A DNA stretch of 63,851 bases, filler included, from Octopus bimaculoides (Eukaryota), in NCBI RefSeq assembly GCF_001194135.2. It is 5 parts of 4 records of this genome, joined end to end, with 100 filler letters (N's around TTAATTAATTAA, not from the genome) between each part and the next. Parts side by side here need not be neighbours in the genome. Positions count along the whole stretch, not along the records: positions 62,349 to 63,851 come from NW_026338588.1; 4 more parts are not named here. One strand, 5' to 3'. Below the pieces are notes generated by a model. The model searched no databases and was not told where the DNA came from. It saw nothing but the letters and a program-made list of their open reading frames with translations. This document shows, in pieces, positions 62,349-63,851 of this stretch (position 1 is its first letter; every line of letters starts with the position of its first letter). The position numbers and the translations under genes are program-made.

Positions 62349-62383
<35 letters not shown>

Positions 62384-62857
62384 ACACACACACATTTGGA
62401 CAAATACGCATAATTCGATTAGTGTGTTTAAATGTTGAGTAGAGCGTCGGCACAGTTTAGGCTACTTATTGTCAGCCGCAGTTGTGGTATACTTTCGTTG
62501 GATCTACTTCAGGAACTCCGCAATGACAACATAATAGTATTAATTAATAGAAGGATATTGTTGCATTTCCCTCGGAAGACTCGCACTCGCAGAGATAACA
62601 CAACGAGTTGTCCAATTTAATTATTACATTTATTATTCAATTACATACAAAGAACGCACTCACCCAATGTTCGTTATGAATAAACAAGAATCATGTCCGC
62701 CATATATATCCATGACATTTTACTACCCTAGTCCTTCAGAACAACAACAATGAAACAATGAACTCAGACGAACCACAGTGACACACGGAACGTCAGACGA
62801 ATTACATATCTAACAGTCCATATAACAGATATGGATTTCGAATTAGACTTTTATTAG

Positions 62858-62902
62858 GTACGACATATGTTTCGACCCATCAGTTTGGGTCTCTTCAGGT
62901 AC
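62858..62902 (-). ncRNA. Minimal type I hammerhead ribozyme (Penelope/retrozyme style)
   Basis: GUAC-CUGAAGA-GACCC(AAACUGAU)GGGUC-GAAA-C(AUAU)G-U-C-GUAC: all core nucleotides present, G10.1-C11.1, GUC cleavage triplet, palindromic helix III ACAUAUGU, AATAAAA 3 nt downstream. Confidence 0.8.
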
Positions 62903-63207
62903 ATTGATAAAGAAGTCTTACTAGTGATTTTTAATGCCGGCTGGCTTGTTGTTATGTGCCCATCAAGTTCGAGAATGAATAAATGCAAATAATATTATAG
63001 AAACACTAAAAATACCAATATGAACGTGGAAATCATGCGTTCCAGTTTCGATAAAATGACCTAATCAGCTTTCGCTGTCATAACTGCTTAGAGGAAAAAG
63101 AAGGTAGAAAAGAAGATTAATACATAGAAAAGTAGTTTTATGTTCGTGCATTTATACACACACACATATATACATATACATACATACATATATACATACA
63201 TACACAG

Positions 63208-63242
<35 letters not shown>

Positions 63243-63420
63243 CATATACATACATACATACATACATTTACATACATACATACCTACATACATATATGGA
63301 CATACATGTATACACAAACTCATATATGTAGGTAATATATGCATATACATACACACATGAAGACACACAGACACAAAGACACACACATTATACACATACA
63401 CTCACACACTCATATGTATG

Positions 63421-63460
<40 letters not shown>

Positions 63461-63851
63461 CATATACATACACATATACATACATATATAGATACATATA
63501 TATATATCTATATAATTAGGCATGCGCGTCCTTATAACACATTATCCCGGAAATGTCAGCTATATTCCGAAGAGTAACTCAATATTGTTAGCAAAGGAGC
63601 GCATTATAAACAGATTTACGGAACAATTACCCATGTGCCTGTATACAGCTAAGCATATTCCATACTACAATCTAAACCAAATATAACTAATGCAAACTTA
63701 ACGCCTACAACTCGGATTAATTCCTCTGAGTTAAGACCTCATATAATAAAAAAGAACAGTATCCGAATAACATGTATTTAGACATGTAACTGTACAATCC
63801 AGTATATAAAGTCTGTCATACCGGCCATGATGAAATACCACAAGGTATAGA

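What the first reader, a model, noticed from the sequence alone, without database searches (positions are those of the whole stretch)
62858..62902. Complete minimal hammerhead ribozyme hidden on the minus strand
Seen: minus strand 5'-GTAC CTGAAGA GACCC AAACTGAT GGGTC GAAA C ATAT G T C GTAC CT AATAAAA-3'. Every invariant hammerhead core position is present: CUGANGA at 62898-62892, a 5-bp helix II closed by G10.1-C11.1, GAAA at 62873-62870, and GUC with predicted cleavage between 62862 and 62861. Helix I is 4 bp (GUAC/GUAC). Helix III is the self-complementary ACAUAUGU. Established: minimal type I hammerheads with a short palindromic helix III that cleave mainly as dimers mark the terminal repeats of Penelope-like elements and metazoan retrozymes or satellite RNAs, often just before a polyA signal. 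Inference: this is a solo Penelope/retrozyme repeat that may still cleave, or generate ends for, any host transcript reading through on the minus strand. With the two other hammerhead-like sites it suggests a dispersed self-cleaving RNA system in this octopus DNA.
Basis: partly seen in the sequence, partly recalled or inferred. Interest (0 to 1): 0.85.

Follow-up and report, generated by a model that had tools for sequence, protein, structure and literature searches.

The report
Lone type I hammerhead ribozyme motif
The minus strand really does carry a complete hammerhead self-cleaving RNA motif of the kind already known by the hundreds to thousands in invertebrate genomes, most likely a stranded single copy left by a Penelope-like or retrozyme-type mobile element, so it is real but ordinary.

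Summary
Window 62904..62856 (minus strand) matches Rfam Hammerhead_1 (RF00163) at 36.5 bits, above its gathering score of 34 (E 3.9e-7).

"Minimal" is imprecise. Helix III is a 2-bp stem with a palindromic tetraloop (AC-AUAU-GU), as in canonical invertebrate type I hammerheads. Helix II can reach 6 bp. The 4-bp helix I can continue through an internal loop into about 10 more pairs.

Helix III is nearly unformed in a single copy. Two copies are predicted to fold into the classic double hammerhead.

The copy is solitary in the 1503-nt piece:
- No second hammerhead and no unit repeat.
- No RT or GIY-YIG remnant.
- No tRNA or pol III boxes.
- No homologous copy in any collection I could search.

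The Penelope/retrozyme origin is therefore the best-supported inference from the literature, not something shown here. Penelope-like elements are abundant in octopus, and the giant squid genome has 235 Hammerhead_1 hits.

Verdict: a new member of a known kind, of low interest. A single copy can cut a read-through minus-strand transcript after C62862 but cannot release a circle.

The parts
62856..62904 (-). Complete type I hammerhead ribozyme motif (Rfam RF00163 Hammerhead_1, full-length match)
   Evidence: 36.5 bits against a gathering score of 34, model positions 1-45 of 45, E 3.9e-7 and 5.2e-8.
62892..62898 (-). Core box C3-A9, CUGAAGA
   Evidence: Sequence read; aligned to the CUGAnGA consensus.
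62874..62891 (-). Helix II hairpin GACCC-AAACUGAU-GGGUC. It has 5 bp, or 6 bp with A62886-U62879, and is closed by G10.1-C11.1.
   Evidence: Base-pair probabilities 0.996-1.0. It is the only helix in the centroid structure.
62870..62873 (-). Core G12 A13 A14 plus A15.1 (GAAA)
62863..62870 (-). Helix III, the self-complementary octamer ACAUAUGU. In a monomer it is a 2-bp stem with tetraloop AUAU. Between two copies it forms an 8-bp duplex.
   Evidence: Monomer pair probability 0.03-0.04. The duplex alone is -7.0 kcal/mol, and the double hammerhead is the cofold MFE at -29.6 kcal/mol. Loop 3 is palindromic in 37 of 50 class members.
62861..62862 (-). Predicted scissile bond, 3' of C17 (62862) and 5' of G1.1 (62861)
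   Evidence: Position of GUC in the Rfam alignment, combined with established hammerhead chemistry. Cleavage was not tested.
62858..62861 (-). Helix I 3' strand GUAC. It pairs with GUAC at 62902-62899.
   Evidence: pair probability about 0.44. All four pairs differ on both sides from the commonest pair of the class yet remain Watson-Crick.
62899..62902 (-). Helix I 5' strand GUAC
62845..62918 (-). Possible extended stem I. The order is GUAC/GUAC, internal loop CAAU/CUA, UUAU/AUAA, bulge CU, then AGACUU/AAGUCU. This has the layout of 'loop 1 plus closing stem' in natural type I hammerheads.
   Evidence: MFE and centroid of the 86-nt fold. The overall z-score is only -1.18, so this is a prediction and is not significant on its own.
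62850..62855 (-). AAUAAA hexamer starting 6 nt after the cleavage site. It lies in the 3' strand of the extended stem I.
   Evidence: The piece has 5 AATAAA over both strands, so adjacency by chance is a few per cent. No function is shown.
62773..62834 (-). Strand-specific 62-nt hairpin downstream of the hammerhead (23 pairs, many of them G-U). It may belong to the same RNA-level element.
   Evidence: -21.1 kcal/mol, z -4.6, 0 of 200 shuffles. The plus strand gives only -10.3 kcal/mol, z -1.5. In my scan of 378 windows it ranked second (z -3.7), so it is a mild outlier.
62349..62394 (.). (CA)23 microsatellite on one side of the unique block that carries the hammerhead
   Evidence: period 2, 23 copies.
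63149..63514 (.). Compound (AC)n/(ATAC)n/(AT)n microsatellite on the other side of the unique block
   Evidence: It also causes the spurious sub-threshold mir-297 and mir-466 hits.

Best explanation
This is a genuine type I hammerhead ribozyme motif of the metazoan class, present as a single stranded copy in AT-rich non-coding DNA. It was most likely left by a Penelope-like element pLTR or by a monomeric non-LTR retrozyme derived from one.

Inferred mechanism: if the minus strand is transcribed by read-through, the RNA forms the three-way junction. The 2'-OH of C17 (62862) then attacks its 3' phosphate. This leaves a 2',3'-cyclic phosphate on C62862 and a 5'-OH on G62861.

Helix III is only 2 bp in a monomer. 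Efficient cleavage therefore probably needs one of two things:
- pairing of the palindromic ACAUAUGU with a second copy, giving a double hammerhead in trans;
- stabilisation by loop contacts through the extended stem I.

With one site only, the RNA can be cut but no unit-length or circular RNA can be released. This copy is therefore most likely a non-mobile relic.

Shown: the motif, the intact core, the helices and the predicted energetics. Inferred: the origin from a mobile element, transcription, and cleavage.
For: - Rfam Hammerhead_1 is matched above its gathering score over the full model.
- Chance expectation is very low (and scaling of the E-value).
- I compared it with 50 distinct canonical type I hammerheads recovered from metagenome contigs, most with the helix III AC-AGCU-GU; I take them to be coral-type from sequence resemblance, not from sample records. 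The helix III architecture is the same. Loop 3 is palindromic. The four inner helix I pairs and pair 10.2-11.2 are kept through changes on both sides.
- Dimer-dependent folding is predicted.
- The copy is solitary. There is no second hammerhead at E up to 10 and no unit repeat.
- The neighbourhood is non-coding.
- Literature:
  - Type I hammerheads in animals sit in PLE pLTRs and non-LTR retrozymes, and most occur as dispersed single motifs (PMC4209133, PMC7761336).
  - Retrozyme monomers are spread evenly along chromosomes, and retrozymes derive from pLTRs (bioRxiv 10.64898/2026.07.22.740005).
  - PLEs are a substantial repeat class in octopus (PMC13282606, PMC8967140).
  - The giant squid genome has 235 Hammerhead_1 hits (PMC6962438).
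- The unique block that carries the motif lies between two CA/TA-type microsatellites. This fits the microsatellite insertion bias reported for PLEs (PMC8557442), but only weakly.
Against: - No homologous copy of the flanks could be found, so repeat status, element boundaries and family are unproven.
- No RT or GIY-YIG remnant lies within 947 nt upstream or 507 nt downstream on the minus strand.
- The flanks are not unusually self-paired, unlike retrozyme circles (z -0.5 and +0.7).
- Loop 2 is 10 nt against 5-7 nt in the class sample, and helix I is only 4 contiguous bp. The canonical loop 1-loop 2 contacts may therefore be absent and activity may be low.
- The monomer MFE is not the hammerhead fold (-9.8 against -7.9 kcal/mol).
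- Microsatellites make up about 29% of the piece, so flanking by them is expected fairly often.
Confidence: 0.7

Rival explanations
1. It is the 3' (or 5') pLTR remnant of a truncated autonomous Penelope-like element, as opposed to a retrozyme monomer. In a PLE the hammerhead would process tandem PLE transcripts.
For: - PLE pLTRs always carry hammerheads, and most genomic copies are dispersed single motifs thought to come from truncated PLEs (PMC4209133, PMC6765202).
- The short helix I (4 bp) and longer helix II (5-6 bp) are PLE-like traits.
- PLE variants in flies, rotifers, shrimps and mosquitoes have a small palindromic helix III (PMC4209133).
- PLEs are abundant in octopus (PMC13282606).
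- The block is flanked by microsatellites (PMC8557442).
Against: - No RT or GIY-YIG signal appears in any frame of the piece.
- A helix III of the canonical invertebrate kind is present, whereas typical metazoan min-HHRs lack it (PMC4209133, PMC7761336).
- This cannot be separated from the retrozyme reading, because retrozymes themselves derive from pLTRs (bioRxiv 10.64898/2026.07.22.740005).
Confidence: 0.35
2. It is an exapted host ribozyme in an intron or 3' UTR. It would regulate a host transcript by cleavage just upstream of a poly(A) signal, in the way of the mammalian Clec2 3' UTR or the intronic HH9/HH10 hammerheads.
For: - AAUAAA begins 6 nt after the cleavage site and lies in the predicted stem I extension.
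- The core is fully intact.
- Retrozyme copies that overlap exons tend to lie in 3' UTRs (bioRxiv 10.64898/2026.07.22.740005).
Against: - No coding sequence or gene feature is detectable in the piece.
- AATAAA is common in this AT-rich DNA.
- No conservation data are available.
- The best Rfam match is the generic Hammerhead_1 family. The two lower-scoring overlapping matches to other families of the same clan were left out of the table and are not named.
Confidence: 0.07
3. It is a chance match to the hammerhead consensus with no shared ancestry or activity.
For: - A relaxed descriptor gives about 2 hits per Gb per strand in random sequence, so a multi-gigabase genome is expected to hold a handful of look-alikes.
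- The monomer does not fold into the hammerhead as its MFE, and the z-score is only -1.18.
Against: - The covariance-model score is above the curated threshold, with about 2e-4 chance hits expected per 2.7 Gb (scaled).
- It has features beyond the descriptor: an 8-nt perfect palindrome at helix III, GUC, and a helix II/loop 2 start (GACC-CAAA) like the canonical consensus. None of these appeared in 1 Gb of random sequence.
- Cephalopod genomes are known to hold hundreds of real copies (PMC6962438).
Confidence: 0.04
4. It is a SINE-like, pol III-driven element that carries a hammerhead, like Schistosoma Sm-alpha.
For: SINE-like retroposons with type I hammerheads exist in schistosomes (PMC6765202), and SINEs are very abundant in octopus (PMC13282606).
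Against: - No tRNA-like gene was found.
- A-box and B-box patterns occur no more often than chance. The only B-box-like match is the hammerhead's own GGGUCGAAAC.
Confidence: 0.04

Closest known systems
Canonical metazoan type I hammerheads of non-LTR retrozymes (coral Acropora, mussel Mytilus, axolotl HHR_Amex2; Rfam RF00163)
   Same: - Type I topology and an identical conserved core.
- G10.1-C11.1 closes helix II.
- Helix III is A15.1-U16.1 and C15.2-G16.2 capped by a palindromic tetraloop. Here it is AUAU, against AGCU in the coral-type sequences.
- Helix II/loop 2 starts GNCC-CAAA.
- The context is low-GC and non-coding (36% GC).
   Different: - It is not in a tandem array. There is a single copy in 1.5 kb.
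- Helix I has 4 contiguous bp instead of 6.
- Loop 2 is 10 nt instead of 5-7.
- The flanks are not highly self-paired.
[quoted passage not shown] 2017)
   Same: - Short helix I (4-5 bp) and a longer helix II.
- Palindromic 15.2-16.2 and loop 3, with predicted function as a dimer.
- Most genomic copies are dispersed single motifs.
   Different: - It has a real helix III.
[quoted passage not shown]
- No RT/GIY-YIG ORF or pLTR repeat is nearby.
Newt satellite 2 and ASBVd double hammerheads (Forster et al. 1988)
   Same: A weak helix III with a palindromic loop. Two copies are predicted to pair into an extended helix III, with both active sites formed.
   Different: Those occur in tandem or multimeric RNAs that supply the second copy in cis. 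Here no second copy is within reach.

Membership tests
Hammerhead ribozyme, type I (Rfam RF00163) | Conserved core: C3 U4 G5 A6 N7 G8 A9, G12 A13 A14, A15.1-U16.1, H17 | tested here: met
   All positions are present: CUGAAGA, GAAA, A-U, and C17 in GUC.
Hammerhead ribozyme, type I (Rfam RF00163) | Three helices around the core with the open end at helix I, and a score at or above the curated gathering threshold | tested here: met
   36.5 bits against 34, over the full model. Helix I has 4 bp plus 1, helix II has 5-6 bp, and helix III has 2 bp plus a tetraloop.
Hammerhead ribozyme, type I (Rfam RF00163) | Mg2+-dependent site-specific self-cleavage 3' of position 17 | not testable with these tools
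   Only folding predictions are available. The monomer disfavours helix III and the dimer favours the active fold.
Hammerhead ribozyme, type I (Rfam RF00163) | Loop 1-loop 2 tertiary contacts of canonical natural hammerheads | tested here: inconclusive
   An internal loop (CAAU/CUA) and a closing stem are predicted in an extended stem I. However, loop 2 is atypically long, and 3D contacts cannot be assessed.
Metazoan non-LTR retrozyme | Head-to-tail tandem repeats (units roughly 150-450 bp, up to about 970 bp), each with a type I hammerhead | tested here: not met
   There is no second hammerhead even at E up to 10 and no unit-length direct repeat, within 947 nt on one side and 507 nt on the other. 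A monomer derivative is still possible.
Metazoan non-LTR retrozyme | Unit RNA predicted to be highly self-paired and expressed as circRNA | tested here: not met
   Flank folds give z -0.5 and +0.7. Expression is not testable.
Metazoan non-LTR retrozyme | Multi-copy family in the same genome | not testable with these tools
   No eukaryotic genome collection is on hand. Exact and protein-level look-ups found nothing.
Penelope-like element (pLTR) | Adjacent ORF encoding RT and a GIY-YIG endonuclease | tested here: not met
   All six frames are full of stops. A Pfam scan of nine of the twelve frame translations of the two unique stretches (all six of 62395-63135 and the three minus-strand frames of 63515-63851) found no RT or GIY-YIG. 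The piece is short, so a more distant ORF is not excluded.
Penelope-like element (pLTR) | Direct pseudo-LTR repeats or tandem/inverted partial copies | tested here: not met
   No such repeats occur in the piece apart from microsatellites.
Penelope-like element (pLTR) | Min-HHR traits: helix III absent or minimal, an extra nucleotide between 9 and 10.1, long helix II, short helix I | tested here: inconclusive
   The short helix I and the 5-6 bp helix II fit. The extra nucleotide is absent and helix III is present (PMC4209133).
Sm-alpha-like SINE with hammerhead | Pol III A and B boxes or a tRNA-like head upstream of the ribozyme | tested here: not met

The most novel reading that the evidence does not exclude
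The roughly 750-bp unique block 62395-63150 is one small non-autonomous, PLE-derived element inserted into a (CA)n/(TA)n microsatellite. In it the hammerhead, the AAUAAA buried in the hammerhead's extended stem I, and the strand-specific downstream hairpin act together. Ribozyme folding would then compete with use of the poly(A) signal and set the 3' end of the element's RNA. That would make it a cephalopod-specific variant of retrozyme/PLE 3'-end processing.
Probability: 0.08. Interest if true: 0.45.

Novelty: new member of a known kind. Interest (0 to 1): 0.2.

Why it matters
It matters little on its own. It is one more genomic instance of the best-studied small ribozyme, in a clade where automated annotation already reports hundreds.

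It would matter modestly if genome-wide analysis showed a cephalopod family of hammerhead-bearing repeats. Such a family would extend the link between retrozymes and Penelope-like elements to cephalopods and supply another source of ribozyme-made circular RNAs. The open literature I searched does not describe cephalopod hammerhead repeats beyond one Rfam count.

Tried and rejected
- **Exact ORF look-up.** I looked up ten ORFs of the piece in the 15-billion-protein collection, hoping to reach longer contigs. None is on record.
- **Protein search.** I searched with the 46-aa read-through translation across the hammerhead, to catch ORFs called on sister copies. No candidate was found.
- **Exact helix II 25-mer.** It has no match in metagenome contigs or genome contigs.
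- **General canonical pattern in metagenome contigs.** It returned 120 loci, most with the coral-like AC-AGCU-GU helix III. They are useful as class comparators but share no flank similarity with the piece.
- **Helix II-specific pattern in viral contigs.** It gave 13 hits on IMG/VR viral contigs that I did not examine further; I assumed they are unrelated phage hammerheads.
- **Supplements of the PLE paper.** None are held, so no octopus PLE consensus was available. The Lunse et al. 2017 paper is not held either.
- **Coding remnants.** The Pfam scan of the translated frames found nothing.
- **tRNA and pol III boxes.** No tRNA gene, and no box pattern more frequent than chance.
- **Retrozyme-like global self-pairing of the flanks.** Not seen.
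- **microRNA hits.** The mir-297, mir-466 and similar hits all lie in the AC/AT microsatellite. They are far below gathering scores, so I rejected them as low-complexity artefacts.

Full report
**Observation.** The piece is window 62349-63851: 1503 nt, no N, and 36% GC in its unique part. The minus strand between 62904 and 62856 reads 5'-AUGUAC CUGAAGA GACCC AAACUGAU GGGUC GAAA C AUAU G U C GUACCU-3'.
- CUGAAGA at 62898-62892.
- Helix II at 62891-62874, closed by G10.1-C11.1.
- GAAA at 62873-62870.
- The self-complementary ACAUAUGU at 62870-62863.
- GUC at 62864-62862, with the scissile bond between 62862 and 62861.
- Helix I GUAC/GUAC at 62902-62899 and 62861-62858.

A scan of the piece against all 4227 Rfam families gives a full-length match to Hammerhead_1 (RF00163) at 36.5 bits. 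The curated gathering score is 34. E is 3.9e-7 for the piece and 5.2e-8 for a 201-nt stretch. No other family in the piece reaches its gathering score. The mir-297 and mir-466-type hits all lie in the AC/AT microsatellite and are far below threshold.

**Chance.** I made three estimates.
- The Infernal E-value, scaled to one family and a 2.7-Gb genome, gives about 2e-4 expected chance hits at this score. This is my arithmetic.
- I wrote a relaxed descriptor: CUGANGAG, helix II of at least 4 bp, GAAA, helix III of at least 2 bp, H17, and helix I of at least 4 bp. It found 2 hits in 1 Gb of random sequence of this composition. None also had a fully palindromic helix III, GUC and the CC start of helix II. 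A bare descriptor match would therefore occur a few times per cephalopod-sized genome, but this particular match would not.
- The canonical pattern CTGANGAGNCCCAAAN{1,8}GGNCGAAAC has one hit in the window and none in 100 shuffles.

The motif is real.

- Helix II can add an A62886-U62879 pair, giving 6 bp and a 6-nt loop.
- Helix I has a further A62904-U62856 pair beyond a U.C mismatch.
- In an 86-nt fold, both the MFE and the centroid continue helix I through an internal loop (CAAU/CUA) into UUAU/AUAA, then past a CU bulge into AGACUU/AAGUCU, spanning 62918-62845. That is the layout of 'loop 1 plus closing stem' in natural type I hammerheads. The fold as a whole is not better than shuffles (z -1.18), so I treat the extension as a prediction only.
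- The AAUAAA at 62855-62850 lies in the 3' strand of this extension.

**Folding.** As a 49-nt monomer, the hammerhead fold costs -7.9 kcal/mol against an MFE of -9.8. Helix II is certain (p above 0.99), helix I is intermediate (about 0.44), and helix III is almost never formed (0.03-0.04). Two copies cofold into exactly the double hammerhead as the MFE. That structure has an 8-bp intermolecular helix III, both helix I duplexes formed in trans and both helix II hairpins, at -29.6 kcal/mol against -19.6 for two monomers.

It does not settle the matter. PMC7229834 describes a 2-bp helix III capped by a tetraloop as the invertebrate form, and a coral retrozyme monomer there self-cleaved efficiently (about 0.8 per min). 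The review states that most invertebrate type I hammerheads form a stable helix III and cleave as monomers (PMC7761336).

**Comparison with the class.** The canonical pattern retrieved 120 metagenome loci, most carrying the helix III AC-AGCU-GU that I take to be coral-type. From these I extracted 50 distinct complete motifs. Against them, the window's motif:
- keeps the four inner helix I pairs through changes on both sides;
- has A-U instead of the common U-A at 10.2-11.2;
- has a palindromic tetraloop in helix III (AUAU against AGCU; 37 of the 50 are palindromic);
- differs in its 10-nt loop 2 (5-7 nt in the others);
- differs in having only 4 contiguous helix I pairs.

Several columns were fixed by my search pattern, so only helix I, pair 10.2-11.2 and loop 3 are informative. 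The motif sits between the 'canonical' type I hammerheads of retrozymes and the 'minimal' hammerheads of Penelope-like elements. The minimal ones have a short helix I and a long helix II, but usually no helix III and an extra nucleotide after position 9 (PMC4209133). 'Minimal' is therefore imprecise.

**Surroundings.**
- The piece has no second hammerhead, even at E up to 10.
- It has no unit-length direct or inverted repeat apart from microsatellites.
- It has no ORF longer than 62 aa in unique sequence, and all six frames are full of stops.
- It has no Pfam domain in the nine frame translations I scanned, so no RT and no GIY-YIG.
- It has no tRNA and no pol III boxes beyond chance.
- The flanks are not unusually self-paired (z -0.5 and +0.7).
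- The unique block of about 750 bp that carries the motif lies between (CA)23 at 62349-62394 and a compound AC/ATAC/AT microsatellite at 63149-63514. This fits the reported bias of Penelope-like elements for insertion into microsatellites (PMC8557442). Microsatellites make up about 29% of this piece, so the fit is weak.

**Search for relatives of the locus.** I could not retrieve any copy of the flanks.
- Ten ORFs of the piece are not in the protein collection.
- A protein search with the read-through translation found nothing.
- The 25-mer of helix II has no exact match in the metagenome or prokaryotic genome collections.
- The metagenome hammerhead loci share nothing with the piece beyond the motif.

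No eukaryotic genome collection was available.

**What it most likely is.** The literature says the following.
- Type I hammerheads in animal genomes belong to pLTRs of Penelope-like elements and to non-LTR retrozymes, and most occur as dispersed single motifs (PMC4209133, PMC7761336).
- Retrozymes derive from pLTRs, and their monomers are spread evenly over chromosomes (bioRxiv 10.64898/2026.07.22.740005).
- Penelope-like elements are a substantial repeat class in octopus, with an expansion dated to about 56 My ago (PMC13282606, PMC8967140).
- The giant squid genome has 235 Hammerhead_1 hits (PMC6962438).

The best explanation is a stranded single copy from that family of elements (confidence 0.7). 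The split between a truncated-PLE remnant and a retrozyme monomer is undecidable here.

If the minus strand is transcribed, the RNA can cut itself after C62862. One site alone cannot release a unit or a circle. Efficient cleavage probably needs a partner copy in trans or tertiary stabilisation.

Less likely readings are an exapted 3'-end or intronic ribozyme (0.07), a chance look-alike (0.04) and a SINE-like element (0.04).

**Verdict.** This is a new member of a known kind, of low interest (0.2). The most novel reading still open is a small PLE-derived element in which ribozyme folding competes with the buried poly(A) signal. I put it at about 0.08 probability, with interest of about 0.45 if true.

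Noticed in passing
window 62773-62834, minus strand: A 62-nt hairpin (23 pairs, about a third of them G-U) begins 27 nt after the hammerhead cleavage site, on the same strand. The tool gives -21.1 kcal/mol, z -4.6, 0 of 200 shuffles. The plus strand gives only -10.3 kcal/mol, z -1.5. No Rfam family matches it. In my scan of 378 windows it ranked second (z about -3.7), so it is only a mild outlier. It could belong to the same RNA-level element or be a miRNA-like hairpin.
   Followed up: partly
window 62845-62918, minus strand: Helix I of the hammerhead can be extended through an internal loop into about 10 more base pairs. The 3' strand of that extension contains the AAUAAA hexamer (62855-62850). 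Folding of the ribozyme would therefore bury the putative poly(A) signal.
   Followed up: partly
window 62349-62394 and 63149-63514: The unique block of about 750 bp that carries the hammerhead lies between two CA/TA-type microsatellites in the same orientation, as if inserted into one compound microsatellite. Penelope-like elements are reported to prefer microsatellite targets, but microsatellites fill about 29% of this piece.
   Followed up: partly
window 63137-63535: The AC/AT microsatellite produces many sub-threshold Rfam microRNA hits on both strands (mir-297 at 55 bits against a gathering score of 90, plus mir-466, mir-3149 and mir-1277). These are low-complexity artefacts, not genes.
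   Followed up: yes
loci L001-L120 (metagenome contigs): Most contigs retrieved with the canonical pattern carry type I hammerheads with the helix III AC-AGCU-GU and a 6-bp helix I, which I take to be coral-type. Many come from a few samples (ERZ1740055, Ga0126343). A few contigs hold two copies, for example L076 with two copies 980 nt apart and L099 and L111 with copies on opposite strands. This probably reflects animal host DNA in those metagenomes.
   Followed up: no
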